This document shows, piece by piece, positions 23,727-60,554 of a stretch of 64,000 bases of DNA. The position numbers and the translations under genes are program-made. Where the stretch lies: NCBI RefSeq assembly GCF_009834535.1, contig NC_045703.1, positions 47,368,001-47,432,000 on the forward strand, in the 5' to 3' direction. Position 1 is the stretch's first letter, and each line of letters begins with the position of its first letter. Under the pieces are notes generated by a model, which saw only the letters and a program-made list of their open reading frames with translations, made no database searches and was not told the DNA's origin. This DNA is from Camelus ferus (taxonomy: Eukaryota).

Positions 23727-23727
<1 letters not shown>

Positions 23728-24583: not shown

Positions 24584-24771
24584 NNNNNNNNNNNNNNNNN
24601 NNNNNNNNNNNNNNNNNNNNNNNNNNNNNNNNNNNNNNNNNNNNNNNNNNNNNNNNNNNNNNNNNNNNNNNNNNNNNNNNNNNNNNNNNNNNNNNNNNNN
24701 NNNNNNNNNNNNNNNNNNNNNNNNNNNNNNNNNNNNNNNNNNNNNNNNNNNNNNNNNNNNNNNNNNNNNNN
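24584..24771. other. N run, 188 nt (gap or masked sequence)
   Basis: Counted directly. Confidence 0.99.
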
Positions 24772-25159
24772 GTTCGGGGTAATTTGGGATTCAGGGCAGC
24801 TACCATTGCAGCATACACTTAGATTTTTAGATGTGGTGGTGAACTGTTGAAAAGAAACTGGCTGAGATTTGAGCATCATCTAAAGTGGAAAAAAGAAATA
24901 TAGCTTGTTTTTGGGCTTCATGCCATTTTCTTCCTTTGGTATCTGAAGACGATTTTTTTTCTGGTTTTGGGGAAAAGTAAGGCACCAAAGACTCTGATAG
25001 TAATCAAAAAATGGTTTCTCTGTAAGCAAGGGGTATCTGTCCAATATACCTCAGAAAAGTTAGGTCTAGGAAATTATACACAGACTCTCATTGCTGGGAT
25101 TAGAATAAGAGGACGAGAAGATTACATGTTCTCTTCTCCAAAATGTTTGATTTTGAGTT

Positions 25160-25420
25160 GTTTAGAGCCGTTTTGGCTGCAAGTAATAGAAACCTGACAT
25201 GAACTGGTTTAAGATAATGGAACATTATTATATTACATCCCAGAAATCCCGGAAGTAAGTGTGGTTAGTTTAGTAACTTGGAGACAGCATCAGGACCAGA
25301 GTTCTTTGCCTCTCTCACACTCTGCCTGGGACCACCAGGCTGTTTCCTCTCCTGGGTGGGAGAGAACAGCCAGGGGTCATCAGGACTGTTCCTTCCTGGG
25401 TCACTTCCAAAGGGAGTCAC
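25160..25420 (-). mobile_element. Old MLT1 (J/K/L-like) MaLR LTR fragment
   Basis: ggctgcaagtaatagaaacctgacatgaactggtttaag resembles the MLT1 terminus in antisense. Confidence 0.6.
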
Positions 25421-27766
25421 AAGAAATAACCTCTCCTTCAAACAAGGTAATGACCTTTCCCTTCAGTCTGGTTACACCTTTGACTCCATAGGAATAGTCA
25501 GGACAATGTCATATGCCGAGTGACTCCCAGTAGTCAAGATTCACCCCAAGAGCTGTGCTAAACCTCAACTCCTGTTTTGTTCACTGCAGTACTGAAATAC
25601 TGTTTGTTTGCCACCATTTGTGGAAAACATTTTTATGTGCCACTATTTAAATTTTATTCTTATTGGAGAGAACGAAGTTACTACTGGGAAGTTAGCACTT
25701 TTGCAATATAGGATTGGGAACTGGGGACAAAGAATGAATGCAATAGAACTGTATGAAATAGAAATTGATTTGTGGGGATCATCTGGGAACATAACTTCCT
25801 TTAAAAGCACCCCTTATATAGAAAAAGTGCATTTTAAATTAAAAAATTAACTTCTAATGAAGTAAGCTGTGTTTATTCCCAACATTTAGCACAGAGTCTG
25901 CCATAGGATAAGTGATCAATAAAAACATGTTGAAAACATGTATAATTTTGAAAATGCAACCCATCTGTAAGTTAAGAATGTCTGTCTGCAACTCAACCCC
26001 TCTTCCAAGGGAGCTATGACACATATAAGAAAGTATTAGTGATCAAAAGAAGAAAGCATGTAATAAAATACTAAATCGAATACCACCAAGAACTCCAAGT
26101 ATAAAGTGTAGCCATTAAGATCTAAGAGTAAAAAGGGAAAAAAGATAGCAATAATTGCCAGAATATGTATTTTTAGAGAGTTAAATGAATGTTGAACCTG
26201 AAAAAAATAAAAGGGACAATCAATATCTTACAGTATTTTTAAACTTATAACTTAATAAACTGTGAAATTTAGAAGAATTCTCACCATATGTTTGGTATTT
26301 AGGGTCTATAGCGACAGGTGTATGTTAAAAAATATCAATAACAATTTCTTAAATCAAATGGGTATTGTTAACATGTGGTCATATATTTTTTCAGCCATGT
26401 GATTGCAACATGTGTTAGAATTTCATCAGCAATAATTCTAAGAAAAATATTTTTCTGTTTTAAAAACCCACCTCATCAAGGACAATGTCCTAGATGTAGC
26501 TTTATTTCTTTAGAGCAGAGCAGCACGTGGTCCTGCTAGAGTAGGACACTGCCTTTGGGGATGAATTGAGGAAGCTAGGAAGCCTCTCTTGGCTCAAAAC
26601 GCCTTTCCTGTTCTGCTGTCTCCCTAGCAAAATCGCACCACCAGATATTCACTCCTTTGAGTCAGCATGTGTGCTCTTTCAAAAAGCTAGTCGTTCACCT
26701 CTTAATATAAAAAGTAGCTCTAATATATCCTTCCTTCTCTACGATTAAATGTGGCCACTGAGGAAGTTCATTAACACATTATCATTTGTTGACACCTGCC
26801 ACGAGCTGGACATTATGTAAATCGCTGGGTTACAAAGGTAGATTGTAAGCAGTCTGTTTTTAGGAGTCCATCATTTAGTGGAAAGACAACCTTAAACACT
26901 ATGACGTGATCGGAAGTGTTACGGGAAGACAGTGCGGATTCACATACTGGGTGGGAAGGAGTGATTATTTTATCAGGATACAGAAGTCCGGTATAGGGCA
27001 GATGGCCAAAAGAGGGCGCTGAGTTTTGGTGGGATGGAATTTCTAGGATAAGGAATAGGGAAAGAGATGGCAAAATGAAGTAAAGATAGCATGGATCCTA
27101 TTTTAATTATTTAAAACTAATTTTCTAAGTGAAAGCTTTTATAAAATAATCTCTTCAATTGAGACATGCATGTAACATTTGTTTTAAATTTAGAATCAAG
27201 ATTGTAGCCAATTAATAACCTTTGACAACAAAATGTGAAAGACAAATGTTACAAGATACTTCTGAACATTGTGGTGATGTCACCCTTGTTCTCCTTCATC
27301 TCCCAAATACATAACAGATGAAGGTAAAGTGACAGACATGTACACAAATGATGGTAATAACTGTAGGATTTGAAGTTACTCATGACTGACAAACCGTCAC
27401 AACATTCGTTACTTTTTTCCAAATACCCCTCCTCATGTCAGCAACAATTTCCTGTGCAAAATACCAGAACAATTTCTCCCAAGATACAGTCTCACAGTCA
27501 TCACCCAGACATTATTTCTAAAGTATTTTAAATATTGATTTAGACCATAAGTTCTGATGGTAAGGTACATGAATGCCTATGTTGATTGGTCAATAAACCT
27601 GGTTCACAGCACTATCTTCAGTCATAGATTGCATTTGTGTAATTGCCAACCCACAAGAAACCACCATCCATGTCTGAAGGCTGAGCTCTTCTAAGACTTA
27701 AATGTTAAAGCATTTGCAAGTTTCCCAGGTCTCCTTTTAAGTATGAATTATACTATCATGGGACCA

Positions 27767-27953
27767 CATGGGTTCTCACTCTTGGTACTTACTAACATTT
27801 TGAGCCACTTTTTTTGTGGGGGAGTGGAGGAGACTTCCCTTAGCAGCATCCCTGGCCTCTAAGCACCCCACCAAGTCGTGACAACCAGAAATGTCTCCTA
27901 ACATGGCCAAATAACCTCTGAGGGGCAGAACTGCCCCCTACTGACTCCCACTG
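27767..27953 (-). mobile_element. MER20 hAT-Charlie MITE
   Basis: ttagcagcatccctggcctct...gtgacaaccagaaatgtctcc...acatggccaaat...ctgaggggcagaactgcccc. Confidence 0.85.
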
Positions 27954-28298
27954 GGTTCATACCATACCAATATCCACTCTTCAGTAATGTAATTGATATT
28001 GCTTATAGATCTATTTTATAGGGCCCATAACATGTTGAAAGGAAGCCTACATAGGACTCATTGAGAAAGAATGGCCGACCAACCAGATCAACACCCATAG
28101 CCAATGATACATCAGAACTCATTTGACCACAGATGACAGCCTATATAACTCAATCAGAAGGAAGTTAAGCAGGAGTGAACCATGTGGTATGACACAGTGG
28201 ACTTCCTTCTATGTGAGACATTTTTTTTTCTGCTTGTAAATGTAACACATGAAGAAAACAAAAATTAGCCCTTATATCACCACCAGGAGATAATGGTT

Positions 28299-28712
28299 AT
28301 TGTGGTAAACTTTATTATTTTTTTCCTGATGTTTACCACTTCTCCATGAGATGTGTGGGGTCTTTTCTGTAAGAGATTATTCCTTTTACCCCAGTGAAGC
28401 CAGTCTTGTACACAGGACTCACTTTGACCAATGAAATATGAGTGGAAATGATGTGCTACTTCTTGGTACAATCTTTAAAAGGCATCACATGATTTCTCCG
28501 GGGCTCTTTTCTCTCTGCCATGTGAAAGACAAAGTACCAAAGAAGGGCTGTTCCTTAAGACCAAATACCAGGACAAGAGGGACGCAAGAAGCAGAGCTAC
28601 AGCTGACTCTCAGCTGACATGAAACAAGAGCAAGAATCTAACCTTTACTGTTATGCCACTAAATTTTAGGATTGTTTGTTACTGCAGCATAACCTCATAA
28701 AGTCTAACTTAT
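28299..28712 (+). mobile_element. MLT1 (H/I/J-like) solo LTR
   Basis: actcactttgaccaatgaaatatgagtggaaatgatgtg...aacctttactgttatgccactaaattttaggattgtttgttactgcagcataacc. Confidence 0.75.
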
Positions 28713-28729
28713 AGTATATCTTATTCTAG

Positions 28730-29150
28730 TCTTTCTGTATATGTATGTGTATACATAATGAATAAAATTTAAATATATTGTTTAAAATTTGTATGTTTCT
28801 ATACAAATATATTTATAATACTTGGGGTAATTTTCACTTAACATGTTTCTCTTTTTGATAGCTTTCAAGTATAATTCTCCCTATTTTACATGAATTTTAA
28901 TAACAGCCTGGTATTCCATCATAGTAAGTCAGCTCCTCCATGTTATTACATTTTTACTTTATTTTCAATTAACACTCTTACATATAATATCCCCATGCAG
29001 AAATATTTGTGTGAAACTTCGATTATTTTCTTAGGATAAGTCAAGGAAGTGAAATTGCTGGGTAGAGAGGGCAAATGTTTGTAAGGCTTTTATTAGAGAT
29101 GGCAGAGTGGCTTACCATAATTATCACACTCATAGACTCTGTCCAGGGTA
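28730..29150 (-). mobile_element. Old L1M fragment
   Basis: ttttaataacagcctggtattccatcata...ataagtcaaggaagtgaaattgctgggtagagagggc (antisense ORF2 end). Confidence 0.6.
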
Positions 29151-30883
29151 GATCTAAGTGTTATTTCTTTACACCCTCACAGCAACACTGGAGATTGACA
29201 TTAAGTTAAAAAAAAGCCAAACTTTGAAAATGAGAGCAAAATACTATCTTGTTTTTGGTTTCTTTTCCTGGCTTGCTAGTGAAATTTTTTTTTTTTGTAT
29301 TATTTTAAGTACTCCATTCCTTATTTTCAAAGTCAACAAGAAATAGTTTTATGAAACCTGGTTTTCCGACTCAAGTTAGATAGCTAACATGAATAGGATC
29401 CAGAGTCCAAATCAATAATCCAATAATTAGCCCCAAGTAATTTAGAACAATAAAATACAGTAGAAATGTTAGTATGAAAGAAATTCATGTAAAGATGATT
29501 TCAAGGGATCCTTGAAAGGAGTGAAAAGGTTGAGAAGCAATGCTATGGGTCACTCATTCATCCATGAACTCATTGAACAAATGAGTGGCTAGAAAGAGCC
29601 AGGTATTGTGCAAATGCTGAAGACATGGTGTTGCACAAGACAGACAGGCCTCCTGCACACACAGACCTTGCAATCTATTAGCCAAAGACAAACCATTACA
29701 CTAGCAATAGCCATTTAACTTGATAATGGCCTGATAGGATATAGGCAGAGCCAAGAGATCTGGTGGCAGGAGTTCCCAACATTGCCAGATGTCCTCTTCA
29801 AAACATTCCTAGATGGAACATGCCATTTAACAAGTGGCAGATTTAGATTCGAAACCAAGTCTCCTTGATGCTCCATGTCAGCATTCAGCCAAAGAATTTT
29901 TCAATATAAGTTAGGAGGGCAGTACATAAAATATGTAGAAAAAGAGAACATAAGGACAAAACAATCTCACCTTATATTTCAAGTCCATGTATGTGTAGCT
30001 TTAGCCTAGGAAGTAGAATGCATCTTAGTTCTTTCCTAATATTGCTTTGTTGACATTTATCTGTGAAGATTCTTTGTCATTATTATTTCCACTAATAATT
30101 TCCTATATAGTACATTGGAAAGTTGAGTTCTTTGGCAGACATTCTTATTACCATTTATTTATATGCACAAATATATTTATTTTGTCCTTGTGATTAAATG
30201 TTAGTTCTTAAAACAGAAATGGATTTTTAGAAGCTGGATGGCTGTTTGGGTTTGTAAAACAAGTTAAACCTGACAATAAGTCATGTGCTTTAAATTTCCT
30301 TGGTTGGCAGCACTGTTGACTCTGGTGGCAGCACTGTGTGTAAGTCAAGCCTTCTTGCTGTCTTCCATAAACTGTTGCATGGTAGACCGATGTCAGCCAA
30401 CCCTGAAGGAAATATCCGAAAATAACACATTTATTTTTGATATGATATTGACCTGTCATGCCTCCAGTTTCCTCATTACATGGTGTGGAAAAGCTTTCAA
30501 AGTCTGAGAGAACACCATTACCTGGGTCACTAGAATTTGAACATTTTATGGAGAGGAGACCATCATAATTTAAATGTGTCTTTGCAAAGTTGACTGTTGT
30601 TTGTCTAGCTCAGGGTCTCAACATTGTCATTAGCTTATTTTAACAGAATTCTAAAGTAATGGTTCACAAGATGATCAAAAAGTATATTTTTATTTGTTTG
30701 TCTCATTTTATATTTTAGTTAATGGCATTGATTAGTCTTGATGTTTGAGTCTTGGCTGAGCAGAAAAGGCATGTCTTCATGTATGTATTTGTTTTCTTTA
30801 TTTGCTTTGGACCTATGAGATAGCCTCACAATTAAAAAGAAACTTAGACAAGAAGGATCCTTTGAAAGCTCAGATAACTTCTT

Positions 30884-31491
30884 CTTTTAAAAACTTTTTA
30901 TTTATTTATTTATTTATTTATTTTACTGAAGTACAGTCAGTTTACAATGTTGTGTCAATTTCTGGTGTACAGTATAATGTTTCAGTCATACATACACATA
31001 CATATATTCCTTTTCATATTCTTTTTCATGATAGGTTACTATAAGATATTGAATACAGTTCCCTGTGCCATATAGTAGAAACTTGTTGTTTATCTATTCT
31101 ATATACAGTAGTTAGTATCTGCAAATCTCAAACTCCCAATTTATCCCTTCCCACCCCCTTTCCCTCCTGGTAACCATAAGTTTATTTTCTGTGTCTGTGA
31201 GTCTGTTTCTGTTTTAAAAATAAGTTCACTTGTCTTTTTTTTTTTTTCAGATTCCACAGATAAGTGATATTATGTGCTATTTTTCTTTCTCTTTCTGGCT
31301 TACTTCATTTAGAATGACGATCTCCATGTCCATCCATGTTGCAGCAAATGGCATTTTTTATGGATGAGTAGTGTTCCATTGTATATAAATACCACAACTT
31401 CTTTATCCAGTCATCTGTCAATAGACATTTAGGTTGTTTCTATGTCTTGGCTATTGTAAATAGTGCTGCTATGGACCTTGGAGTGCATGTA
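30884..31491 (-). mobile_element. Young 5'-truncated camelid L1 with perfect 14-bp TSD
   Basis: (TTTA)n tail, gaagtacagtcagtttacaatgttgtgtcaatttctgg...; tcagataacttctt at 30870-30883 and 31492-31505. Confidence 0.95.
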
Positions 31492-32009
31492 TCAGATAAC
31501 TTCTTGAGCAAATTGAAGGCCTATTAGTTATTCAAGGTGTTAAATAATTTTGGTGGGGGGTAGGGTTCTGCATGTTGCTGCAGAAGGAATCATTTTTCTG
31601 CTCTGTTCATTAGCACCACTATAGTTGGATGCTTCCATTCATTTCTAGACAGAGTCTCCACCAAACCAAGTGTTTTCATTCATTCATCATGCATTTATTT
31701 GTTTATTCAACAAATGCCTGTGGGCAATGTACTATGTTCCTGTTCTCTGTGTTATGCTAGGGCTAGATCAAAACTACAAAAATCCATGCCTTTGATTCAT
31801 AGCCTAAAAAATCATAATGCTTACATGTGAGTGGCACATTGTGGCTTACAGAAATATTCACTTGCATTATGTCATTTGATTCACAACAACCTTGTGAGAC
31901 AGAGAAAATGGATACTGTTTGCATTTCACAAATTAGGTAGCTAATCTTTGTGCTTCTAAGTAGATTTTTGTCTACCAAATATTAATCTAGCATCATGAGC
32001 TGAAATTTT

Positions 32010-32560
32010 ATCTATATGGTACCTACAAATGTTGATCTAGACAATAGCAGTCTCAGTGGAGTCAGTGGTGGGGAGGAAAGGATGATTGGTTGAGAAGGGT
32101 GGAGGAGAGAGGAAGTGAGAAGTGGAGACAGTGAGTGCTTAGAGACCTCTTTTGAGGAAGTGGTGGGATAGGCAGACAAATGAAGGAGGACATGAGGTCC
32201 AGGGAGGTTTAGTTTTTTGAAGCATGTTCACATGCTGATAAGGATGAGACAGTAACAAGAAGAGTATTGATGATGCAGGGTAGAGGAAGGGGATAATTGC
32301 AAGAAAAAATTCTCTGAAAAGCTGAAAGAGGAAAAAAATCTGGGGTGAAAAATAGTCTTAGAAGAAAAAAAGGAGTGAATTCAGTTTAATAGGAAAAAAG
32401 ATAAAAGTACGGATATGGATAGGTATGTTGGTAGATTTGGAAGCAGTAAATGAGATTACTTTCTTCTAATTGTTTCTATTATCTTAGTGAAATAAGAGAC
32501 TAGTTAGCTAAGGGTGAGGAGCAAGCAGATGGTGTTTGGTTTTTAAGGAAAAAGGAAAGG
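32010..32560 (-). mobile_element. L2 LINE fragment
   Basis: agcagtctcagtggagtcagtggtgggg...gagaagtggagacagtgagtgcttagagacctcttttgaggaag. Confidence 0.7.
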
Positions 32561-33005
32561 TATAAGACAATCATTACAGATTCCATTTTACATTTTTAAT
32601 GTCATAGTTTTTCCTTCAATTTCCTACATAAAGATGAAAACATACTGACTTCTAGAAATTTACATAATTGTAAAAGTCTTCGCTATTGTCATTATTATTT
32701 ATTTATTTTATATCCATCCATAGGAATATTTTACCTTAATGTAAGATCATTTGGACTAGTTGAACATCCTGTCTTAATGGAAAAAATTTGTATTGTGTCA
32801 CATGCAAAGCAATGTTTAATATGTCAAAACTTTTACTGCTGATAATGACGATTTGCTAGTTTTGAAGTTCGAAATATTTGTGAATTAATGGTGGTTATGT
32901 TTGTTGCCAAACTCTGCAGTAGTATTTTATAGATTTGAGTGATGGTCCTTACAAAATTTCAGTGAATTTTTTATATTTTTAAAGACTACATCAAGGGGTG
33001 GATAT

Positions 33006-33477
33006 TGTTCAGGTTAATTCTTCATGGCATTTCTACATATATTGTTACAGCTTTTGTTCCATTCTGTCTTTTCATGGCTTTTTCTTGTGCACTTGACATG
33101 GCATATGAAAGACCAAGATCCTTCTACAAGAGGGCAGATTTGCTTTCTAACTGTATAAAGATAATAGCTCCCTCTGGAAAAGGTTGGGTAGACTTGTTAG
33201 CAACTCCTTATAAGACTGGAGTTTTCCTAAACTTGGAATACAGACTCACTATGGATACAGCACCTACCTAGACCCACCTACACCACTCCCATGGGATTTG
33301 GGGTGCAGGGTGAAATGACTCAAACATGAAGTTCATACTATCTGCTGTGCTGTGAGTAATAAAGTCTTTTGTCTCTGACCCAGGAGTCTTATGTCTTCTG
33401 ATAGCATTTATGAAACTGTGGCCAGCTAACTTGTTAACTTACAAGTAAACATCTCAGACTTCTCAAAATTCCTGACA
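33006..33477 (+). mobile_element. ERV1-type solo LTR (eutherian MER class; subfamily not assigned)
   Basis: TG...CA ends; AATAAA at 33358-63, then gtcttttgtctctgacccaggagtc...gaaactgtggccagctaacttgttaacttacaag...cctgaca. Confidence 0.75.
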
Positions 33478-35740: not shown

Positions 35741-35750
35741 TCCTCACTTC

Positions 35751-37718: not shown

Positions 37719-37808
37719 TTTTTTTTTTTTTAATGCATGTACTGGGTATTGAACCCAGGACCTCGTGCATTCTAAGCATGCGCTCTACCACTGACCTATA
37801 CCCTCTCC
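37719..37808 (-). mobile_element. Camelid tRNA-derived SINE (vic-1 type, short form)
   Basis: Reverse strand ggagagggtataggtcagtggtagagcgcatgcttagaatgcacgaggtcctgggttcaatacccagtac plus poly-A. Confidence 0.92.
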
Positions 37809-38019
37809 TGAATCTTTTATCACACTGGGTCATTATCACAGCCGTCTGAAGTATGTGTGGTAAATGTTAATATTCCAGGTTTATAGGTGAAGAATTGGCA
37901 CATACCTAGGATAAGTGACTCAATATTCTTTTCAAAGATTTCTCATTGGCCTCTCCATGTGTTTCTGTGAATTTATGTCTGCTCTGAAGCATGAGAAGGT
38001 TTTTCTTCATAAAGCAACT

Positions 38020-39143
38020 CCTTCTCACTTACCCCATCTAAATAAACAGCTCCATCATCTACCAGTTGCTTGAGTAACAAATGTGGGAGGATTTCTCTCC
38101 TTTTCTTCTCCCCACATCAAATTCACTGGCAAATCCTGATGACTTTATTTCTGAAACATAGTCAGAATGTGTCAAGTTCTTTACTGTACAGATGTTTTGG
38201 TTATTACATTTAAAGCCAGCAGTCCTAGGACCTAGAGAACTCTTATGTCATAGGTGCTCAACAAATATGTGTAAAAATGAGTATTTTCATTCCTACACAA
38301 GGAGTGATAATCAAAGTATTTAGCAATATATATGGCAGGAGTTTGGACCATGAGCAGAAATACTAAAGTCCTGTAAGTTGCCTGCTATGCTAGATCTTAA
38401 CTCTTCTATTACTGCATCCTGAGGCTGTTTGGAGGTTCTGGAGAGAGGATAGGATGGGACAGGAAGGTGGCAGCATTTGGGGGACTCAGAACAAGGGCTG
38501 CTTATCAACATGTAGAGAGAAATTTCTATATCTTAACAACTGAACGTTACATTTTGACTTTACCTGGTGTAATAGCCAAATATCAGCTACCACTTAGTTT
38601 TAGCTACCACCATTGCTCCCAGGATTTCTTAATTTCCAATATCTACCTAATTGCTAGAATTATGATTTAAATACAATAGTCATTCATCTTGTTCCCCTGT
38701 TTGGAATCTCCCAAAGGACTTCCCATTACCCTTATAATAAAACCCAAATCTATTCAGCCTTACAGATCTTTTTAGATTCCTTGACTCTGTCTTTGGACTA
38801 GATATTTCTTCTCTAATCCTCATGTGGCTGCCTTTTTCTTATCTTGGAAAAGAACTGAGCTGTAATCCTCTTTCTTCAGAGGGTAATTCTTTTGACTACC
38901 CAACATTAAGGAGCTTTCCCAGTCATTCTCTATCTCACCACTCTATTTTAATCCTCTGCCTGGAACTCCTTGCTACCAACTGTGTTTGTGTTTTCAGATT
39001 TGGTCTCACTCTCCTCACTTGAATTAAGCAGAGCACTGGAGCTTTATCTCCCTTGTTCATGACAGTATCCCAGGACCACCCAGAACAGTGCTGAGCACAT
39101 AGTAGGCTCTTAGTAAATATTTATCTCTTGATTGAATGAATGA
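38020..39143 (+). mobile_element. L2 LINE, fragmented 3' kilobase
   Basis: Ends with an L2-type terminus cagaacagtgctgagcacatagtaggctcttagtaaatatt...gaatgaatgaa. Confidence 0.75.
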
Positions 39144-39948
39144 AGTAGATATGCATCATAAGCCAGAGTGTTAATTATTCCTCACCTTAGTATCAGCATT
39201 TCTCAAGTGTTCAGAGCTACTTAATTTCCATCATTGTGCTTATGAATGTCACAACAGAAGAAGTACGTGTACCCACATTTGGGAGACGATCCCATCAATA
39301 ATTCACTAAAATTGAAGTGCTAAAAAAATATAACTCTACTAGAGAAGGTAAAAATACTTATTTTATCATAGAAGCAAATTTTTACCTGAAGTATGCGGTT
39401 CTGGTAATGCTCCTGAAAATGTATCCTTTCTCCAAGAAAAGTAACTTGAGTATTCATTTCATTTGCTAGAAAACACTCTGGCTGCCAATATAATCACCTT
39501 GCAGCAATAACAAATAAATGTACTTGTTACCTAAATATTACCTAAATATTAACCAATCATCATGAATACAGAAAAATACACCTTGATTACAGAAAAAGAT
39601 ACTTAGGTACAAAGATTATAAATATTAAAATGAAGTAGGAAAGAAGAAATCTGGTAAGTTTTCTATTCGATTTTAATTTTTATTCCATCTTGTAAATTCT
39701 AAGTAGTATCAGGCAAGAGTGAATTATTGCTTCATAATCCAGCAGCCCCGTGATTTGTAGACTATTTATTTACTACATCAATAAAAGGGTGGACAGGCAA
39801 AAAACCCCGTGAATCCTGAATTCATACATGGATGTGAAAATATTACTACTCTGCTCGACTTAACTTGTCCTCGATTCCTCGGGAATAATGAGTTTGAGAG
39901 GGTCCAGGGAGAGCTTTTCCTGTTGCGTATTTTCTTTGTTTCCGTCAG

Positions 39949-40176
39949 NNNNNNNNNNNNNNNNNNNNNNNNNNNNNNNNNNNNNNNNNNNNNNNNNNNN
40001 NNNNNNNNNNNNNNNNNNNNNNNNNNNNNNNNNNNNNNNNNNNNNNNNNNNNNNNNNNNNNNNNNNNNNNNNNNNNNNNNNNNNNNNNNNNNNNNNNNNN
40101 NNNNNNNNNNNNNNNNNNNNNNNNNNNNNNNNNNNNNNNNNNNNNNNNNNNNNNNNNNNNNNNNNNNNNNNNNNNN
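39949..40176. other. N run, 228 nt (gap or masked sequence)
   Basis: Counted directly; begins immediately after ...tttctttgtttccgtcag. Confidence 0.99.
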
Positions 40177-42046
40177 TCAGAGGGCTGTAAGGGCTGTATT
40201 GTTTTGGTCTTAAAATCATTTTAAACAAGTTGGGTTTCTGAATTAAAAATTGCAGAGGAATAAGGAAGTCGCACATGAAATGCGATCTTACACGTTTGGT
40301 CCAAGAAACTGAAAGTTCTTACTTTGCCATAGACAACTGGAAGGAAGGCAAATTGTATTTATTTTATTGGTAGCCTTGATGGTTGATGCCATCAATAAAA
40401 ATCTGTACAGGCTCTCCGATTCTCAAGATATGTGAAAATCCAGGTGGTCTTGCCTTGGGCCTAGAGACTTGCGATTTCTGTCCCCCTTCCTGTGTCTCCC
40501 TGTTCCAAGAAAGGACCATGGGATATGGAGACTTGCCCGGACTGCTTCTGAGAAAGTGATTTCTCAATCCTGTCTCGTGCAGAGAAGGTCAATGGCTGAC
40601 CCACAAACCATTTAAAGCGGGAGGAGGAATTAAGCAATACCCTAGGAGACCAATGGCATCAGCCTTTCCCTAAAAGTTAGCTGGGACAGGAGGGCCATTC
40701 ACTAACTTTCATGACTCCTCCCCCAGCCCTCTGCTTCCCCATGACTACTGTCCAACAGCCCACATGCTGAAGTCAGCTCTGCTGTTGCTGCATTCCCATC
40801 CTCGTACGCAGAAGGAGGGTGGGACGAGTCCCATCACTTCACACAGACTTCCATCAGGAGGAGAGAAATAAAACCAACCTTTTCCTGTCAACTTCCCTAC
40901 TGGCTGTCGCACTGGAGGCCTAAGTGTTTGGGGGCATCATGTATGAGATTCACATACATCGTCCTCTGAGCGACATGGCATTTGTGTTTGTTGAGTTGAA
41001 CAAGGGCAGAAAAACACTATAGACATTGAAAATTGGCAATAATTGAAAGAAACTTTAAAAGTTATTTCTCACTGTAGTTTGTCTAATATCTACCTTCATC
41101 ATTTCATCCAGCGGTGACTTAGGAAACTCAGAGATTCAGAAATTTCCACTGAGATAAAATGGATGTGTTGGAGACTGTTTCTGAATAGTGGCAGGACTTC
41201 CCCCGAGTTCTAACACCGTCTCCTTCCCCATATCCTCCTGACCCCCAGGCCTCTAGCCAGCTCCAGCATATCCATCCTCTCTGCCTTTGAACCTTCTCTT
41301 TACTCATGCAGTTCCTCAAGGAGCCTTCTCATTGGCTCCTGGTGTTAATCTCTCAAGCACTGGAGCACGATGGAAGCAAACATGCGTGTTCTGTACCAGA
41401 AGACCATCAGTTGCACCAACATCTTGATGTATTAGGTTTGGAAATTAGGGAATGGTTCATCACAACAGTGAGGAATCTGTCCTTTTAAACTGTATTTGCT
41501 GCAAATGTGATTTGGCTTATACAAATGTGACCTGCTGAGAGGTCTGTTTCGGAGTACTCTAAGTCACAAACTGAGATATCCCTGGCATAAAGATGCCTAA
41601 AAGAGAATATGCAGATAAGTTCACATGTTCATAATTTTACAAATAAATTTGCAAATGAGATAAAGAGAGCAATTGAACAAAGGTGGAGAAGATATTGAGT
41701 TGGTTGGAACAGCATGTGAGATACTGTTTCCCCCCAATTCTGTACAATGTAACCATAAAACTTATCAAATACTGATCTGCATATCAAGATAATGGTAGTT
41801 TTCACTTCTGTTTCATTCTGCAACCAACCTATGAAGAGGAAAGCAATGCAGCATTTTTCCATCCCCCACCTTTTCCTTAAGAATTCAGTAATCCAGATAA
41901 CATGACTTTACCTGTGTATCACTTATGAGACATCACTGGCAATTGAAGAAAAAGGAAAAAAAAAAAACCAAAAACAGTTCCAGGGTGAGACATCTTCAAA
42001 GATCACATTAAAAGCACCGTTCTTAGTATGAAAGCAAAACTGTATT

Positions 42047-42200
42047 CTTTTCTTTCTTTTTAAAACAACTTTATTGAGATATAATAGACAAAAAACTGTA
42101 CATATGTAATGTATATAATTTAACGAGTTTGGAGATAAGAATAATACATAAGGAGAATAGGAGGAAACTTTTAGAGGTGATGACTATTTTACGGCATAAG
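42047..42200 (-). mobile_element. L1MB-like 3' end with inverted upstream segment
   Basis: Antisense 3' end 42047-42147 (actttattgagatataat...gagtttggagataag); sense segment 42150-42200 (ggaggaaacttttagaggtgatg). Confidence 0.75.
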
Positions 42201-44144
42201 CACTCTCTTAAAAATGAACTGTTCTCAAATTCTAATTGTCCTTTATATCTTGCCCTGGCCAAGACTTGTATATCTCCTTCTGCTAGCATACTGAACTCTA
42301 TTTCTGCTTTTTATAATAACTGGCTATGGTAACAAAACATCTATTCTATAGCAAAACTGTATTTTAAGTTGTGTAACTTATTTTTCTAAACCTCTGAAGT
42401 AAGACTAAGAGTGTCTGGCTAAATATAAAGAAGAGAATTCAATATATGTGTAAAACCAACATACCTAGCAGAGAATGTGCAAATAAATTTAAGGTTCTCC
42501 ATCTCTCTGTACCTATTCAGTAGGCAGTGTACTTCTTATACACTGATTTCTGATAGCAGAGGTGAACATGAATGAATTCCCATAATACAGTCTTTAAAAA
42601 CACGTATAACTTAACAACCCAGTAACATTAGCTTTGAGGAGACACTCGCTTTCTCATTCAGAGCATACTTCATCTTGGCATTTTCTTCAGAATTGTTACA
42701 ATGTGTGAATACATTCAGTGGGCAATAAGCAAACAGAAATTTCACATCATCTTCATCTTGGTTTGGAAGGAATAGAAACAGCATAACTGTTGGCCACGGA
42801 GACGCTGTGCCTTTCCCAAGAGACAAGAAGTGCTGGGCGTGGAGGCTTAGCTGTGGAGGCGCAAGATTACAGGTCTTGGAACAAAATATTATTCTACATG
42901 GCCCAACAAGGCATGTTATCAGATACTTAGTACTGGCTGCCTACCTGGGCAGCGCACCAAGAGGGAGAAGCGTGTGGGATAGAGAAAATAATTATTTGGA
43001 GGCTGTTATTCAACACTTAAGACCCATGTGAGGGAGCAAGGGGACAATGTCTCATACCGCAGTCTGCATTAAAATGTCTCCTACTTCTGTTTTTAGAAAT
43101 ATGTTGTTTTATTTGAGTCAAAATTTTATTTTTTAAATACAAAATTAGAACAATAGGAATAATAGCATATGGTTGAGCAAACAGAAGGGGTCACCTGCTG
43201 CTCTTGTTAGTATTAGCCACTGGGAGAGCCATGCTGAGTTGAATCTGAGGAAAAGATGAGGGTCTCCCCCTCTCAGCTGTGACTCCCTTGTCACAGGGCC
43301 CTTTGGCCCTGGAAAGCGAGTGAAGAATTGAACACCTAGAGAGATGGCTGACTCTTGGCCAGGTTACCTCTGCTTTAGGGCTAAACAGAATAAACGAGGG
43401 GCCCGTTGCAACACTGGAGAACTTTGCTTTGATAACTGAAAATCTGAAAAAGTTTGCCTGGAGAGACTCACAAGTTTGCCCTCCTGAAGAGCTTGCTATC
43501 CTGATTGCCTAAGTCTGACTTTTTTGTCTATTCTAAAATTGTCTCTGAGGATGAGCATTTTCATGTATGGACCGTAACACATAGAGTATGTGCATGTCTT
43601 TGCTTACCAGGGGTCAGATTCTCCCTGGAGTCTCTAACTGCTATTAAAAGTCACAAAACAAGTACAAGATGGTAGGATGAAGCTTGACAAATAGCTTTCT
43701 AGAGATGACATTGTGAAGTAAATTTCAAATGCTTCAAACTCTCTGTTTTATTACCATTTACTTCAAATGGTAAATTATTTAAAAAGAGATTTTATGTTTT
43801 CTCAATCATGTACTGCAAAATGAAAGACTTTGGGGAAAACATTTTAACAAACTAATAAATCTCAGTAAAGTTCCATAAATTTGCTTTTTAAAATTATTTA
43901 TTACATCAAGGCCAAATATAAATTTTATAGTTTTGTCAGAATAGTGTCTGTGGGTCTTTAAGAGTAAAGTTTTTTTTTCCCTAGAAGACATTTAATGAAA
44001 CACCAATCTCATTTCTAACTTGTTGTTACCCTTTGCAATTTTCACAGTTAGATATTATTTTGTATTACTATATCTGCTATTAAGATTTACCCAAAAGCTT
44101 GGTTTTCTCCTCTGTCTTCTTTACTCAATGACAGATCTCAATAA

Positions 44145-44182
44145 CATCATCATCGCCATCATCATCATCATTATTATCATCA
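44145..44182. repeat. (ATC/ATT)n microsatellite preceding a MIR (to about 44330)
   Basis: acatcatcatcgccatcatcatcatcattattatcatc. Confidence 0.8.
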
Positions 44183-49900: not shown

Positions 49901-50024
49901 ACAGAAGTTTTATTTACTTCCTTTAAGAAGCATGGTCAGGATCTCAGGCAAAATTTCCATGACAAACCAATTAGGATATTCTTATGCCTTCGGGGAAAGT
50001 GGTTCCCTAAAGCTGAGGCTCCCT

Positions 50025-50054
50025 CCAACACAGACAGACACACAGACACACACA

Positions 50055-50089
<35 letters not shown>
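50025..50089. repeat. (CA)n microsatellite with CAGA variants
   Basis: caacacagacagacacacagacacacacagacacacacacacacacacacacacacacacacac. Confidence 0.95.
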
Positions 50090-50092
<3 letters not shown>

Positions 50093-53000: not shown

Positions 53001-53322
53001 GACACGTTTCCACAGAGATCCTGCATGGCTTCTGTCACAGGATCACTCCTAGGAAGTCTCTCTGGCCCCTGACTTTTTCAGATCATTTTTAGACATGTAG
53101 ACTGTGGTGGTGTAAAGAAATCTTACAGAGTTAGTTACATCAGATTATCTGCAGTGAAGATGTAAATAGAGTTCTGTTCCCTCCTTTTATTCAGCAGATG
53201 ACAATTGTGATGGAGGCAGGAGCTGATGTGGATGAAGACTGGTGGCAAATGGCCACCTGGCCCCTGTAGGTATGATTTCCAGTAGAGGTGAGATGTCATC
53301 ATACAAATTCAAGCTCGGAGGG

Positions 53323-53759
53323 TGCAGTGGATTGGATAGTGCCCTCCACTTCCCCCAAAAATATATGTCTCCCTAGATTCTGTGACTCTGAGCTCATTTG
53401 GGAAAAGTCTTTGCAGATGTAATTGTTAAGGAATTCAAGATGAGGTCTTCACGGATTAGGGTGCGCTCTAAATCCAGTGACAAGTGTCCTTATAAGAGAG
53501 GGAGAAGGGAATGTAAAGACAGAGGAAGAGATTGGAGCAAAGTGTCTGTAAATGAAGGGATGCCCAGAGTTGCCAGCAGCCACCAGAAGCTAGGAGGAAG
53601 GCTGAGAACAGATTCTCCACAGAGCCTCAGAAGGACTTGCCCCACTGACACCTTCATTTTGAACTTCTGGCCTCCAGAACTGTGAGAAAATAACATTTTG
53701 TTATTTTAAATCCCCCAGTTTGCGATAATTTGTTACAGCAACTCCAAGAAACTCATACA
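53323..53759 (+). mobile_element. MLT1C-like MaLR solo LTR, full length
   Basis: TG...CA; gtctttgcagatgtaatt...aaatccagtgacaagtgtccttataagaga...gacttctggcctccagaactgtgaga-like text...gaaactcataca; near-TSD gaggg/gatgg. Confidence 0.9.
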
Positions 53760-55505
53760 GATGGCAATGACTGCGTGCTATCGCAGTCACAAGGTCGTCC
53801 AGCTCGGGCTTGCTCCTCTCCAGGAAGAGGGAAATTAGTGCCTGGTGAGGCAGCCCATTGAGTGATTGGGTCACACTGGCCGTACAGTGGGAAATTGGCT
53901 TTCAGTTACTGTTTTCTTTCAGAATGTCTGATTCGCAAGAATGGACAATGGATGTTATATATGAGAGACTGGTACTTCCTTTTGTTTGTATATGTACATA
54001 TTTTAAAAGAGCATGACTATACCCTTGAAGAAAATCTTGTTAAAAGAGACGAATTACTGTATTTACTTAATTGTCTGAATTCAAAACTTTAGGGGGTGGC
54101 CAATTTGATTTAGACTTAATTGATGACACTGGCTGAAAGAAATTTTGAGTAAAGGTAATTTATTTAAAATAGACCGTTTTCAGGACATAAAAAAAGTTAA
54201 AAGAATACATTTATTAAGCTTGAGTTTTGAGGAATTAGATTGATAGCACAAAATGCTCTCTATTCATTATAAAAATTTCAAGGAATACAATATTCAAAGA
54301 AGAGTTTCAAGTATGCCTCACTATCAACAAAAAAGTTTTTAGGTTTCAGTGGCCTGAAAAAGTTGATCTGTTTTCCTACTTCAGTAATTCCCAAGAAGTA
54401 AGATATTGGGGAAAAAAGTGACTGAAAGTGTAAATTTAGAAAGCAGGAGTTATAACCAGCAGTAAATATGTAAATGCCCATTTGGCTGTTTAAAATCTGT
54501 ATGTGGATGGAAATGTAGTGGAAAAGAAAAACATAAATTATCCAGAGTGGATTTATCACAATTATGTATTCTAAAAATCCTATCTTAAAAAAATGCCAAA
54601 GAAGACTGACACATGGAATTCATTACATTTTAGCTAATGGTTTCAATCAAATTTATACCAGAGCTGAGTAGGCAGCAAGTATTTCTGGACCTGTGTCTCC
54701 AATCACAGGGTACCCAGAGACAGAGGCATTCACACACAGAGGAAATTCAGTACCCAGACTACTGAATGCTAATGCCTTTCCCACCCACACTTTTTACTCC
54801 AGGGATAAAATGATTTTTTTTTTAAATTTAGGCTCTATGAAAGGCCAAAATAGTTAGTAGGATAAGTAGTATTTTTTTAACATTATTCCATGACAAGTTT
54901 ATAGTAGAATTGGATGGGATGGAAGGAGAACATTGCAGTTGTTTTTTGTGGCATGGCATGATACTTTTTCAAAACTTGGTAGTTTACACATAGAAGAAAT
55001 AAGAAAAGAATGATTTATTGACACTGGCCATGCAAATTTGTGTTATTCTTTTTTTTTCATGCATTTAAATGTGATTTAATGTTGACATCTATCTAGATAA
55101 TCTTTAAATTCTAATTTTTATTTGGAGTATTTTGTTAATTCTTCATATACTAAATATATTTTATTAACTTGGACAAATGAACTATCCTTTTTTGTTTCCT
55201 TTGAGGTGTGGGGATTGGTGAAAAGGAGAACTCTACGTGAGAGTTCTGTTTGGTTTGTTAATTTCTTTTCGCAAGGTGGCTTTGAAAGGAATCGGTTTGA
55301 AAGTTATTGTCAGCTATGGATTCTGTTGAAGTGGGATGGGGGAATTCTTTGCCTGCGTGTACAGTTTTGGCCTTCAGGGGGCAGCCAAGTGCAGCGAAGC
55401 TAACTGAACTGGCAAGCACTGCCCTGTTTTCATGTTACCTGAGTAACCCTAGTTCCCCTAAAATGCAGCAAAAGCCAAAGTAAGCACTCCTGCACCATCT
55501 GTCAC

Positions 55506-55701
55506 NNNNNNNNNNNNNNNNNNNNNNNNNNNNNNNNNNNNNNNNNNNNNNNNNNNNNNNNNNNNNNNNNNNNNNNNNNNNNNNNNNNNNNNNNNNNNNN
55601 NNNNNNNNNNNNNNNNNNNNNNNNNNNNNNNNNNNNNNNNNNNNNNNNNNNNNNNNNNNNNNNNNNNNNNNNNNNNNNNNNNNNNNNNNNNNNNNNNNNN
55701 N
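55506..55701. other. N run, 196 nt (gap or masked sequence)
   Basis: Counted directly. Confidence 0.99.
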
Positions 55702-56959
55702 TCAGAACCAAAAAGTAAGGTGACTGCCTGCAACATCCAGGCTAGCCCAGATGGCATATTATGCCATGTATCATAGGCATTCTAAACTCTACAGTCTGAC
55801 ATCAATTGGTTATAATGCATTTGCAAAAAATAAAAAATACCCCCCCAAAAAGAGGATTTTGGCATTTGTTTCTTATTTCTGCTTTTTTACTTCTTAACTG
55901 GTAGACTTATGTTCTTGGTGAGAAGATACTGCACTTAAGATATTTTGTGTGGGTGGTTTGGATAAGAAACTCCCCTCCCCTGGAAGATTCATTGGAAATA
56001 ATAATACATTTGATATTTATGTCGACTAGAGTGCTGAAATTCTTTCCTCTCTCTTCTCTCAGAAGTAAAGGAGGACAGTAAACATTTTCTTTCTTCTTAA
56101 TGACAGATACCAGGTTGAAAGAGGAAGCTCTGGTTGTTGAATGAATAAGTGAGGGAAGGGAGGAAGGAAGGAAGGCAGAATGGAAGAAAGGAAAGGAGGC
56201 AAAGAAGGAAAATCCAGTAATTTTCATTATTCCTCAGCGATCTTCTTACTCTTAGGAAATGACCCATTGATCTCTTTTCTCAAAGTCATTTCAATTTTGA
56301 GTCCATCAGCATCCTTAAAAGTATGAATACTCTTATTTACCTTTCAGACAGTAGCCTAAAGAGTAACAGACCTCCAGATCATCCCTCATCTATACTCATG
56401 CACACATACCCTGGTGTAAAAGATCTGTAAAATACTACCTAGATATTTGCAATTTTAGCACCAACTTTTTGTTTTGTCTTGGACCCAATGGAGTAATGGA
56501 ACTTGAAATGCCCACTCTTTTCTTCCTCTACCAGCAATGTTTTTCTAATTATTGTATAAAAGACAGTCCCTGTAGTACTAGACCCGCGTTTCTGGTTGTA
56601 TGCACTTCAGGAATCTTTTGGTCTAGTGCAGTTTAAGCTTATGATTGGAATTTAGTTTTGTACAATGGTCATTATCAATCCTGCTTGCTATTTTCTAAAG
56701 TGTAAAGTTATTATGGCAATACTTTGCCTGAATATCATGAGAGAGAATAAGTCAAGAATACAATAATCACAATTGTATGATTCCATAATTGGTATTTACA
56801 ATTGGTAATTGGTATTATCATTTACAGAGCATCTTCTATGTTTCCAACACTGTATTAGGAAATTTATTTATATTAACACCCAACTCTCACAAAAATTACA
56901 AAAAGTAGGTATTATACCCAATTTGTATATGTTTAAACTGAAGCTCAGGGATATTAAGT

Positions 56960-58480
56960 AATTAATTAAGTTACTTCAAGGGAGGTAACTATTTTCTAAA
57001 GAAGAAATAAAATAAAAGCAGGATAATTCTAAGAAGAAATTAAGGAAAGACACCTAACTTAATAGATATGAAACTGTATAAAGATATAATCATTAAAAGT
57101 AAATTTATGGCACAGGAATAAACAAATTGACAGGACTGAAAAGAAAATTCAGTAGTAAACCCAAGTATGGCTAGTAACTAATTTTATTGAAACTTCCTTA
57201 ATAACAGATGCCTGGCTGCATGTTCTGCATACTTTTTAATCACTTAAACCTCAAGTGCTCCTAGGAGACATTATTATCTCTGCATTTTAGACAAGGAAAC
57301 TGAAGCTTAGACGTATAACTGTAGTAACTTGTCCAAAGTTATACAGTTAGTGGGAACATAAGTTTTTATACTTCTAGCATCAAACTGCTTTACCATTATG
57401 TCCAGTTTCTTCAGTGTATCATGGAATTTAGTGCATGTTAAAAGTAGCATTTTAAAGTCAGCTAGAGGAAAAACAATAAATTATTCAGTAAGCAGTGTTA
57501 GGATAACTCTATAAATTGAGTATTTAACTTAATCATACCAAAATAAATTCCAGATGGATAAAATATATAAATATAAACAGTGAATCCATAAACATCCTAA
57601 AAGAAAACTAGAATGAGTATTTTTATGTTCTTGGGAAGGCCATTTTAAATATGACAATAAAACCAGGAATCATAAAGTAAAATGTTGATAACTTTGACTG
57701 TAAAATGTGATAAATTTTAACTGTAAACAATTTAAAAGACAAACAAATTACTAGGAAAATATTCACAACATATATGCTAGGCCAAGTACTAATGATGTTA
57801 ATAGATACAGGACTCTTCAAATCAATTTAAAAAATCAATACTTTAATAGCAGAGTGGGAAAAGTTTATGAATAAATACTTTACAAGAGGAGAAATACAAA
57901 AGGTCAAAAATATCCATAATAATCAAAGAAAAGTAAATTAAAACAGGAATGAGATTGCATTTTTTCCCTATTTGATTGAAAAAGATCAATGCTTTGTGCA
58001 AACAATGGTTTGGGAAAAAATGGTATCTCATAAAATGTAATTTGTTACTGAATCAAAAATAAAAATACCATTTGTCCTAATAGTTCCACTTTAAAAATCT
58101 TAAGAAACTAATTATACAATTAAATAAAATATATCACAAGATATTTAAAATGTTCAAGTAGATTTATTGCCCCATTACTTATTATAGAGTAAAATTGGAA
58201 ACAATATAAATGTCTATCATGGAGGCATTTCTGTTAGAGGTTATGGTACATGGATACAATGGAATACTATGAGCCTCTAGAAGTAATGTTACAAAGCTAT
58301 ATTTATGAGCATGGAAATGTGTTCATGACATTCAAGTTAAAAAAAATGCAAGCTACAAACCAGCCGTGAAAAATCATATGTGAATACTAATATATGTCTA
58401 AAGAGAAGTCTACTAGCTATTCAACAAAACATTATGAGTATTACACTGCTTTTTAAAAAAAATCTTTATTGTATTTAAAT
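56960..58480 (+). mobile_element. Old L1M (L1ME-like) ORF2/3' remnant, interrupted by a MIR at about 57190-57400
   Basis: ataccaaaataaattccagatggat...aaacatcctaaaagaaaac...aaattggaaacaatataaatgtctatca...atggaatactatgagcc. Confidence 0.7.
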
Positions 58481-58779
58481 ACTTTGTTTTATGATGCCTT
58501 ATTTTTAGTACTAGGAAAGCAGCAACGCTATTTTCCTTTTGGGAAACTGTTGTGAAGACATACATGGGCTGGAACTGAGTGAAACAGGATGGAAAGAAAG
58601 TGATTCTGAGACTCCTTGGATTTCCTACAGGCTTTACAGCCTCTCTGGAGCATCTTTACTTCTGCCAGGCAACCACTCTGTTCTCCTTTTTGATGCAAAT
58701 GTGTTCTGCTCTGCCATTACTTTGGTTTGCACATGGCATTGGCTAGTCATGACCCATGCTGTCATGGTGCCATTTCTGC

Positions 58780-59100
58780 ATTTATGTTAACTGGCCTTAC
58801 TGATCTCTGGGAATTTCCTACTCAGAAATCTTGGAGAAAAGGAATCTGATTGACCCAAGCTATCGTTTCTTTTCTTCAACCGAGATCCTGTCAAAATGTC
58901 ATTGACAGGCTTGTGGCTTGGTTATCCTTGGGTCAGGTGTTCACTCAATACAATTACTAGGGCTGATGGGGGGTATTTCATGATACCCAGGCTACCCAGG
59001 CCAGCCCCTCAAATAGCTTGGGAGCAAGGACATTTCCTTTACAAGGGCATTCTGGTGGGCAGGCAGGGATTAGCCACTTGGCAATTGGAACTATAGTACA
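58780..59100 (-). mobile_element. Old MLT1 (K-O-like) LTR fragment
   Basis: aggaatctgattgacccaagc...ttgggtcaggtgttcactcaatacaat. Confidence 0.45.
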
Positions 59101-60398
59101 GTGACTATCCAGCTTACTTCCTCTGACTCTCCTTTAACAATTTAAAGAGCTGACAGGGAAGAACATGTCAGCATTTCCTCTATATAACTGAGTAACCTTG
59201 GAAATCTAGAAAAAAGAGGCAACCCGACCATATTCAATTGGGAAACGTTTTGCTCAGTTTAGGAAAAGTGTGCCATTGAAATAATTAGATGTCATTAGCA
59301 AATCTGACCTCTATGTGCAAAAATACACAGATCATTGAGCACTCTGGTGAACATCTTTAAGAGCCACTCAGAAATTCTTCACAGCATGAATAATATAAAA
59401 TTTTGCTTCAAGAAATATAATAGGTAACTCTCTACAAAGTTAAAAATCAAAGAAGATAGAAACATAGCCTTCAAAATGATAATTTAAATAGTTTGGTCTA
59501 AATAAATCTCTTTAATAAAAATTTATAGCAACATTAATTTGTCTGTGTTGTGCCAACTTAAAATTTGAATTTCTAATAAATTCTAAATGGCAATGATCTG
59601 TGCTGGTCAATTACTATAATTCACCATCTCTAAATATCTTACTACAAGTCACAAATCTTACTGATTCATAAACCAAGATAAGAAACTTAAGTAATGACTT
59701 TGTCCAAATTCATATATTTAATTATTTGCTTGAACAAAGCAAAATCAAATCAGGCAATTATCCAGAGGACTAATTTGCATGACCTAATGTCAATAATAAT
59801 ATTAAAATTCCGTAAGCAAAATAGAATAAATGTTGATATTACCTTAAAAGGCCAGTGTTTCCAGCCCAAATCGGAAGATTAGATTCCATGATATTACTTC
59901 TTTTAGATTATATTTATGAAAGATTTTAATGCAAGTAAACAAAATCCTTTCATTTTGTTATTCCATTATTTCAAAACTATAATTAAAATTCCTGAAGTGT
60001 CTTGGAAAATGCTAGCACTAAGGATAAGATTTAAAAAGATACAACCCTCAATATAAAGGAATTTGAAGTTTAGTAGAGAAGACAGACAAATGAAGAGATT
60101 ACAGCATGTATTTTCCTGTAAAAGTGTTCAAGATGTCATGGGAAGCCTAGGCATTATTCTTTTTCTCATTTTTGTTGGGAGTCATCTGTATATTAATATT
60201 CTCATGGACATTCAAGTGTTGCAATATCCTGGTTTTGAGTGTCTTTTTAGGATAGAGCCATAACACGTTTTGGGAGTTAATACATAGTCTACACATATGC
60301 ACACAAGCCCTTAGGCATAATTTCTACTGATATGAAACATGACTTTAAATTCTTGCCAAATAACACTTCTGTAGTTTTTTTTTTTTTAACTCGATGAG

Positions 60399-60554
60399 NN
60401 NNNNNNNNNNNNNNNNNNNNNNNNNNNNNNNNNNNNNNNNNNNNNNNNNNNNNNNNNNNNNNNNNNNNNNNNNNNNNNNNNNNNNNNNNNNNNNNNNNNN
60501 NNNNNNNNNNNNNNNNNNNNNNNNNNNNNNNNNNNNNNNNNNNNNNNNNNNNNN
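60399..60554. other. N run, 156 nt (gap or masked sequence)
   Basis: Counted directly. Confidence 0.99.

What the first reader, a model, noticed from the sequence alone, without database searches (positions are those of the whole stretch)
24584..60554. Four UCE-sized N runs sit in unique conserved-looking sequence, not in repeats: possibly masked ultraconserved elements or exons
Seen: N runs of 188, 228, 196 and 156 nt (24584-24771, 39949-40176, 55506-55701, 60399-60554). Three have repeat-free flanks; the fourth has only a T run on its left. All have CpGs in their flanks, while the young L1s, LTRs and microsatellites that normally break assemblies are fully resolved. Known: ultraconserved elements are about 200 nt and cluster around developmental regulators. 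Inference: these may be segments hard-masked because they were nearly identical to human (for example by a contamination screen), so the hidden bases could be the functional core of the locus.
Basis: partly seen in the sequence, partly recalled or inferred. Interest (0 to 1): 0.7.

Follow-up and report, generated by a model that had tools for sequence, protein, structure and literature searches.

The report
Deliberate masks over conserved camel DNA
The four N runs are not assembly gaps but exact, letter-for-letter masks laid over single-copy, conserved camel sequence, three of which look like exons, so this is mostly an artefact of masking and not new biology.

Summary
They are not estimated scaffold gaps. 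Gap-free short-read contigs from independent camel runs cross runs 1 and 2, and the DNA between the abutting flanks is exactly 188 and 228 nt. A contig from a distant mammal crosses run 3 with exactly 196 nt. Its flanks are only 72-79% identical to the window and carry about one indel per 46 nt. Run 4 could not be tested.

The hidden DNA is therefore real, single-copy, easy to assemble and, for run 3 at least, free of net indels across species.

On length, only run 2 reaches the 200-nt UCE minimum.

The flanks point to exons for runs 1-3. Plus-strand acceptor and donor signals bracket them (p 0.004-0.02 each; joint 0.0004-0.03), and the minus strand shows nothing. Run 2 starts exactly at a textbook acceptor. 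Contigs from RNA runs pass through these sites unspliced. Ordinary; low interest.

The parts
24584..24771 (.). N run 1, 188 nt: a letter-for-letter mask over real single-copy camel DNA
   Evidence: Two gap-free Logan contigs from different runs (L002, 7224 nt; L004, 1735 nt) are 100% identical to both flanks. Each holds exactly 188 nt between 30-mers that abut the run.
24555..24778 (+). Candidate exon around N run 1: acceptor-like sites 29 and 10 nt before the mask, donor-like GTAATT 7 nt after it
   Evidence: Rough splice-site scoring matrix (PWM): joint acceptor+donor statistic p about 0.02 against random placements on the plus strand, 0.76 on the minus strand. Inference only.
39949..40176 (.). 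N run 2, 228 nt: a letter-for-letter mask over real single-copy camel DNA
   Evidence: Logan contig L001 (5260 nt) matches the flanks with one mismatch in 5032 nt and holds exactly 228 nt between the abutting anchors. The tool's gene table lists a 138-aa ORF at L001 2760-3176, the same 417-nt span as window 39860-40276 on the minus strand. That frame is therefore open through the whole hidden stretch.
39925..39948 (+). Polypyrimidine tract plus CAG: a splice acceptor ending exactly at the left edge of N run 2
   Evidence: The score is in the top 0.04% of all positions on both strands of the window. The chance that any of the 8 mask edges falls on such a site is about 0.3%. Sequence read.
40177..40192 (+). 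Ten visible nt, then donor-like GTAAGG; the candidate exon would be 39949-40186 (238 nt)
   Evidence: The donor score is in the top 0.3% of positions. Joint statistic for run 2 on the plus strand: p 0.001-0.016 over five window choices.
39649..40476 (.). CpG-retaining flanks of N run 2
   Evidence: 13 CpG in 600 nt, o/e 0.60, against a window o/e of 0.19; top 0.4% of random placements.
55506..55701 (.). N run 3, 196 nt: a mask whose length equals the orthologous stretch in a distant mammal
   Evidence: Logan contig L011 (another species; flanks 72-79% identical, 78 gap openings in 3558 aligned nt) aligns up to both edges. It holds exactly 196 nt between them.
55306..55901 (.). Conserved shoulders around N run 3
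   Evidence: Against L011, the first 37 nt on the left match 35/37. Positions 38-200 on the left are 83-88% identical with 2 indels. The right 300 nt are 72-86% identical with 3 indels. Further out, identity is 67-78% on the left and 69-74% beyond 800 nt on the right, with many indels.
55469..55719 (+). Candidate exon around N run 3: acceptor-like ...aaaatgcag 37 nt before the mask, donor-like GTAAGG/GTGACT 13-18 nt after it
   Evidence: Donor scores are in the top 0.07-0.12% of positions. Joint statistic p about 0.015-0.03 on the plus strand for search spans of 40 nt or more upstream, and not significant for 10-20 nt. The AG and the GTAAGGTGACTGC are unchanged in L011. Conservation also continues beyond both sites, so they do not mark a sharp boundary.
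60399..60554 (.). N run 4, 156 nt: nature and true length not tested; taken to be a mask by analogy
   Evidence: No contig that reaches it was found. No splice-like bracket on either strand (p 0.3-0.96 over the five search spans). It lies between T13+AACTCGATGAG and T7+AAC.

Best explanation
The four N runs are deliberate, length-exact masks written over real, single-copy camel sequence, almost certainly because those stretches resemble human DNA. They are not unread assembly gaps. The DNA on both sides is continuous, and reading frames across a run are as the N count implies. What is hidden is ordinary deeply conserved sequence. Runs 1-3 are most likely (about 50-60% for run 2, a little less for runs 1 and 3) three exons of one unidentified plus-strand gene with introns of about 15 kb. 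Otherwise they are conserved non-coding elements. Run 4 is a conserved element of unknown kind.

Shown: exact length for runs 1, 2 and 3; clean short-read assembly through runs 1 and 2; conserved, nearly indel-free shoulders around run 3.
Inferred: the reason for masking, the exon reading, and everything about run 4.
For: Same-species Logan contigs L001, L002 and L004 are 100% identical to the flanks apart from one mismatch. They carry no N and hold exactly 228, 188 and 188 nt between anchors that abut the runs.

An orthologous contig from a distant species, L011, holds exactly 196 nt at run 3. Its flanks have about one gap opening per 46 nt, so about 4 would be expected in 196 nt.

All four run lengths are multiples of 4 while the starts are not in register. 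That suggests a program.

For exons: the acceptor exactly at the left edge of run 2 scores in the top 0.04% of positions. The plus-strand acceptor+donor bracket gives p 0.02, 0.004 and 0.015 for runs 1-3. The joint p is 0.0004-0.03 over five search-window choices, against 0.34-0.83 on the minus strand. Run 2's flanks retain CpG. RNA-labelled runs from three studies hold 36-100% of the sampled words of two stretches.
Against: Run 4 was not tested at all. For run 3 the exact length comes from another species, not from a camel contig.

The reason for masking (human-likeness) was not measured.

The contigs cross the candidate splice sites of runs 1 and 2 without a break or a splice. The runs they come from are probably, but not provably, the RNA libraries. 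If they are RNA, the candidate exons are not visibly spliced in those libraries. DNA carry-over in those libraries would explain the 'expression' equally well.

Around run 3, conservation continues past both candidate splice sites, as it does at non-coding conserved elements.

Three exons over 200 nt in a row would be unusual.
Confidence: 0.85

Rival explanations
1. The hidden stretches are non-coding ultraconserved or highly conserved elements (enhancer cores) clustered in a gene-poor, AT-rich region. The splice-like signals would then be chance.
For: The window is 37% GC and has no ORF above 138 aa. The four elements lie within 36 kb. Run 3 sits in a block of roughly 500 nt where conservation falls off gradually and continues past the candidate splice sites. 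RNA-run contigs are unspliced. Run 4 has no splice bracket. About half of the classic ultraconserved regions are non-exonic (PMC12660711).
Against: The plus-strand-only acceptor/donor bracket on three of four runs has joint p 0.0004-0.03. The acceptor falls exactly at the edge of run 2 (about 0.3% by chance). Three runs are shorter than the 200-nt minimum for UCEs. Identity to human, mouse and rat was never measured.
Confidence: 0.38
2. The N runs are ordinary scaffold gaps of estimated size in a short-read assembly.
For: The scan's program labelled them as assembly gaps. Variable N lengths do occur in paired-end scaffolds. Run 4 is bordered by T runs that could stop an assembler.
Against: The length equals the N count to the base in 3 of 3 tested runs and in 4 contigs. 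Short-read contigs pass straight through runs 1 and 2. All four lengths are multiples of 4.
Confidence: 0.03
3. The hidden stretches are copies of slowly evolving multi-copy sequences, such as snRNA or other small-RNA pseudogenes, or fragments of retrocopies. They would match human DNA by paralogy, not through conservation of this locus.
For: Run 4 (156 nt plus 8-11 visible nt) is flanked by a 10-nt direct repeat TTTTTTTAAC. That could be a target-site duplication. A tRNA-like SINE head occurs elsewhere in the window.
Against: De Bruijn contigs run unbroken through runs 1 and 2, which a multi-copy or abundant RNA sequence would tend to break. Run 3 is orthologous and collinear in a distant species, with conserved shoulders. 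Rfam finds no partial family match at any run edge.
Confidence: 0.04

Closest known systems
Hard-masking of sequence by a screening pipeline (N substituted base for base)
   Same: The N count equals the true length. The flanks are continuous, and the real sequence is present in independent read sets.
   Different: Who applied the mask, and the exact rule, cannot be read from the sequence. The multiple-of-4 lengths are the only trace of the rule.
Ultraconserved regions of Bejerano et al. (481 segments, 200-779 nt, identical in human, mouse and rat; 225 exonic, 256 non-exonic; as summarised in PMC12660711)
   Same: Similar size range. Single copy. For run 3, no net length change against a distant mammal, and conserved shoulders.
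   Different: Three of the four masks are under 200 nt. Identity to human, mouse and rat was not and could not be measured here. Membership is therefore not claimed.
Conserved internal exons with conserved intronic flanks (for example regulated alternative or poison exons; PMC11357089)
   Same: Run 2 starts at a strong acceptor and is followed by a GTAAGG donor. Its flanks keep their CpGs. Around run 3, conservation extends into the presumed intron.
   Different: No spliced RNA was seen. The gene is unidentified and its coding capacity is unknown. Introns of about 15 kb differ from the compact splicing-factor genes where poison exons are best known.

Membership tests
Assembly gap of estimated size | The N count is an estimate and generally differs from the true distance between the flanks | tested here: not met
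   True distance 188, 188, 228 and 196 nt in four contigs, equal to the N counts of runs 1, 1, 2 and 3. Run 4 not tested.
Assembly gap of estimated size | The hidden sequence is hard to assemble (repeat, low complexity, extreme composition) | tested here: not met
   31-mer-based Logan contigs of 1.7-7.2 kb pass through runs 1 and 2 unbroken. The flanks have no in-window repeat copy.
Ultraconserved element (Bejerano definition) | Length of at least 200 nt | tested here: inconclusive
   Mask lengths are 188, 228, 196 and 156, so only run 2 reaches 200. A mask may be shorter than the identical stretch. For example, the 10 nt left of run 3 are identical in L011.
Ultraconserved element (Bejerano definition) | 100% identity between human, mouse and rat | not testable with these tools
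   The operators barred reading the hidden letters or looking them up in human sequence. No such comparison was made.
Conserved non-coding element | Orthologous, collinear and much better conserved than the surrounding DNA in distant species | tested here: met
   Run 3 only. There is no net indel in 196 nt where about 4 gap openings would be expected. Shoulders are 83-95% identical, against 67-78% further out. The identity of the core itself was not measured.
Conserved non-coding element | Not part of any exon | tested here: inconclusive
   Splice-like brackets on the plus strand argue the other way. No annotation or junction reads were available.
Internal exon of a spliced gene | Acceptor (polypyrimidine tract plus AG) upstream and GT donor downstream on one strand | tested here: met
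   Run 2: acceptor exactly at the edge (top 0.04%) and a donor 10 nt after the mask. Runs 1 and 3: both signals within 37 nt upstream and 18 nt downstream. Plus strand only; joint p 0.0004-0.03. Run 4: not met.
Internal exon of a spliced gene | RNA evidence of splicing at those sites | tested here: inconclusive

The most novel reading that the evidence does not exclude
The window holds a tight cluster of genuinely ultraconserved segments. One would be an ultraconserved exon (run 2) whose intronic flanks are also under strong constraint, belonging to a long, sparsely annotated plus-strand transcript expressed in the camel reproductive tract. That would make it a regulated, poison-exon-like or non-coding-RNA exon system, not routine coding exons.
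Probability: 0.1. Interest if true: 0.3.

Novelty: already known. Interest (0 to 1): 0.12.

Why it matters
The main value is for reading this scan. Variable-length N runs in this genome are exact masks, not gaps. Frames and distances across them can therefore be trusted, and they flag the most human-like, conserved DNA in a window. Biologically the hidden elements are of familiar kinds (conserved exons or conserved non-coding elements), and nothing here suggests a new mechanism. The plus-strand splice bracket gives a cheap, letter-free way to guess which masks hide exons.

Tried and rejected
ARAGORN and my local scripts did run over the whole window file, including that place.
- **A contig across run 4, or a camel contig across run 3**, was not found. 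About 30 exact ORF look-ups and three homology searches gave nothing. The P0003 contigs L007-L010 reach only window positions 61190-63476.
- **Two exact-pattern scans of JGI metagenome contigs** with edge sequences of runs 2 and 3 were blank. This is uninformative.
- **Rfam at a permissive threshold** found nothing touching any run edge.
- **Cross-species holders through the look-up of sequencing runs**: only three coded organisms (A, B, C), all at share 0.99-1.00, plus RNA runs. No distant species was listed.
- **Strand skew** is weak: G over C is 1.9% on the plus strand, and there is no T/A skew. I did not use it.
- **The locus or gene was not identified.**
- **Hidden letters.** Only distances, N counts and flank match flags were computed.
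Full report
**Observation.** The window holds exactly four N runs: 24584-24771 (188 nt), 39949-40176 (228), 55506-55701 (196) and 60399-60554 (156). The window is AT-rich (36.8% GC, CpG o/e 0.19). No flank within 1 kb of a run has a second copy in the window, apart from 5% of the left kilobase of run 1, and no tandem repeat touches a run. Run 4 lies between T13+AACTCGATGAG and T7+AAC.

The CpG claim holds only for run 2: 13 CpG in the 600 flanking nt, in the top 0.4% of random placements. The other three runs are at background. 'Young L1s' is not supported. The longest ORF is 138 aa, and repeat copies within the window are 75-91% alike.

**Continuity, tested first as the scan's program asked.** Three spurious ORFs in the flanks exist, with identical sequence, in the protein collection built from Logan contigs. 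Their contigs were fetched.
- L001 (5260 nt) covers window 37776-43035.
- L002 (7224 nt) covers 23700-30923.
- L004 (1735 nt) covers 24492-26226.

A script that printed only coordinates found the 30-mers abutting each run, and then the 30-mers 20 and 60 nt further out. The distance between the abutting anchors is 228 nt in L001 (run 2) and 188 nt in both L002 and L004 (run 1). These equal the N counts. None of these loci contains an N. blastn shows the contigs are 100% identical to the window, apart from one mismatch. The alignments stop exactly at the run edges.

For run 3 no camel contig was found. A profile-free search with a flank ORF found a 64%-identical ORF. Its contig, L011, is the orthologous locus of a distant mammal. 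The flanks are 72-79% identical to the window, with 78 gap openings in 3558 aligned nt. The alignments reach both run edges, and exactly 196 nt lie between them. At the flank indel rate, about 4 gap openings would be expected in 196 nt.

Three of four runs are therefore length-exact. An assembler's estimate would not hit the true length to the base three times. Run 4 remains untested despite many look-ups.

**Why they are masked.** This part is inferred. The operators state that N stretches are gaps or purposeful masks. An earlier follow-up on other DNA of this genome reached the same conclusion (s1-149256), so the scan has found this before. The chance of that is 0.4% for the four runs alone. 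It suggests a program that works in steps of four.

I did not read, print, translate or compare the hidden letters. Identity to human was therefore not measured.

**What the hidden DNA is like, judged from outside.**
- It is real and single-copy. 31-mer-based contigs run through runs 1 and 2 without breaking.
- No RNA family ends at any run edge.
- Around run 3, conservation against L011 is 35/37 in the first 37 nt on the left. It is 83-88% with two indels out to 200 nt on the left, and 72-86% with three indels over 300 nt on the right. Further out it falls to 67-78% on the left and to 69-74% beyond 800 nt on the right, with many indels.
- Run 3 is thus the core of a block of roughly 500 nt with elevated conservation.

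- The left edge of run 2 is a polypyrimidine tract plus CAG that ends exactly at the mask. Its score is in the top 0.04% of all positions on both strands, so about 0.3% chance for any of the 8 edges. A GTAAGG donor follows 10 nt after the mask.
- I compared the best acceptor upstream plus the best donor downstream with 6,000-20,000 random placements. On the plus strand this gives p 0.02, 0.004, 0.015 and 0.7 for runs 1-4.
- The sum over runs gives p 0.0004-0.03 for five search-window choices. The minus strand is never significant (0.34-0.83).
- In L011 the AG before run 3 and the GTAAGGTGACTGC after it are unchanged, but conservation continues beyond both.
- The tool's own gene table shows a minus-strand frame open through all 76 hidden codons of run 2. 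That happens at coding exons but also by chance in a few percent of cases.

Against the exon reading, RNA-labelled runs from three studies hold 36-100% of the words of two stretches. The contigs cross the candidate splice sites of runs 1 and 2 collinearly with the genome. So either the RNA is unspliced or there is DNA carry-over.

I put the exon reading at about 50-60% for run 2 and slightly less for runs 1 and 3. Non-coding conserved elements take most of the rest. Run 4 shows no exon signal.

**Comparison with known kinds.** Classic ultraconserved regions are 200-779 nt and identical in human, mouse and rat. About half are exonic (PMC12660711). Only run 2 reaches 200 nt, and the identity criterion was not testable, so I do not claim membership. 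The thing works like a screening hard-mask over conserved exons or conserved non-coding elements, both familiar.

**Verdict.** The UCE label and the developmental-locus story are untested. The finding is mainly an artefact of deliberate masking, and its interest is low.

Noticed in passing
This is probably a trace of the masking program (for example seeds every 4 bases) and not biology.
   Followed up: partly
window 37734-37805 (-) and 22460-22549: A tRNA-Ser(AGA)-like sequence scores 37 bits in Rfam. It has an 83%-identical 90-nt copy in the opposite orientation 15 kb away. These are most likely heads of a tRNA-derived SINE and not a working tRNA gene.
   Followed up: partly
window 60374-60398 and 60555-60564: N run 4 is bracketed by a 10-nt direct repeat, TTTTTTTAAC (T13 AAC on the left, T7 AAC on the right). 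It could be chance in T-rich DNA, or a target-site duplication around a small inserted element.
   Followed up: no
window 39860-40276 (-) = L001 2760-3176: The collection's gene caller called a 138-aa ORF that runs through the whole of hidden stretch 2 on the minus strand, with no Pfam hit on record. An antisense open frame of this kind is common opposite coding exons.
   Followed up: no
window 23700-30923, 37776-43035, 55001-61000, 61190-63476: Contigs from 2025 runs labelled reproductive-system (meta)transcriptome cover long non-coding stretches collinearly with the genome. Either the whole 24-63 kb span is one unspliced transcription unit, or these libraries carry host DNA.
   Followed up: partly
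L011 (SRR21357950) and L012 (SRR29428515): Runs in the Logan-derived protein collection carry host DNA of a distant mammal that is orthologous to window 54037-57900. Spurious ORFs called on such contigs can serve as handles for cross-species comparison of non-coding DNA.
   Followed up: partly
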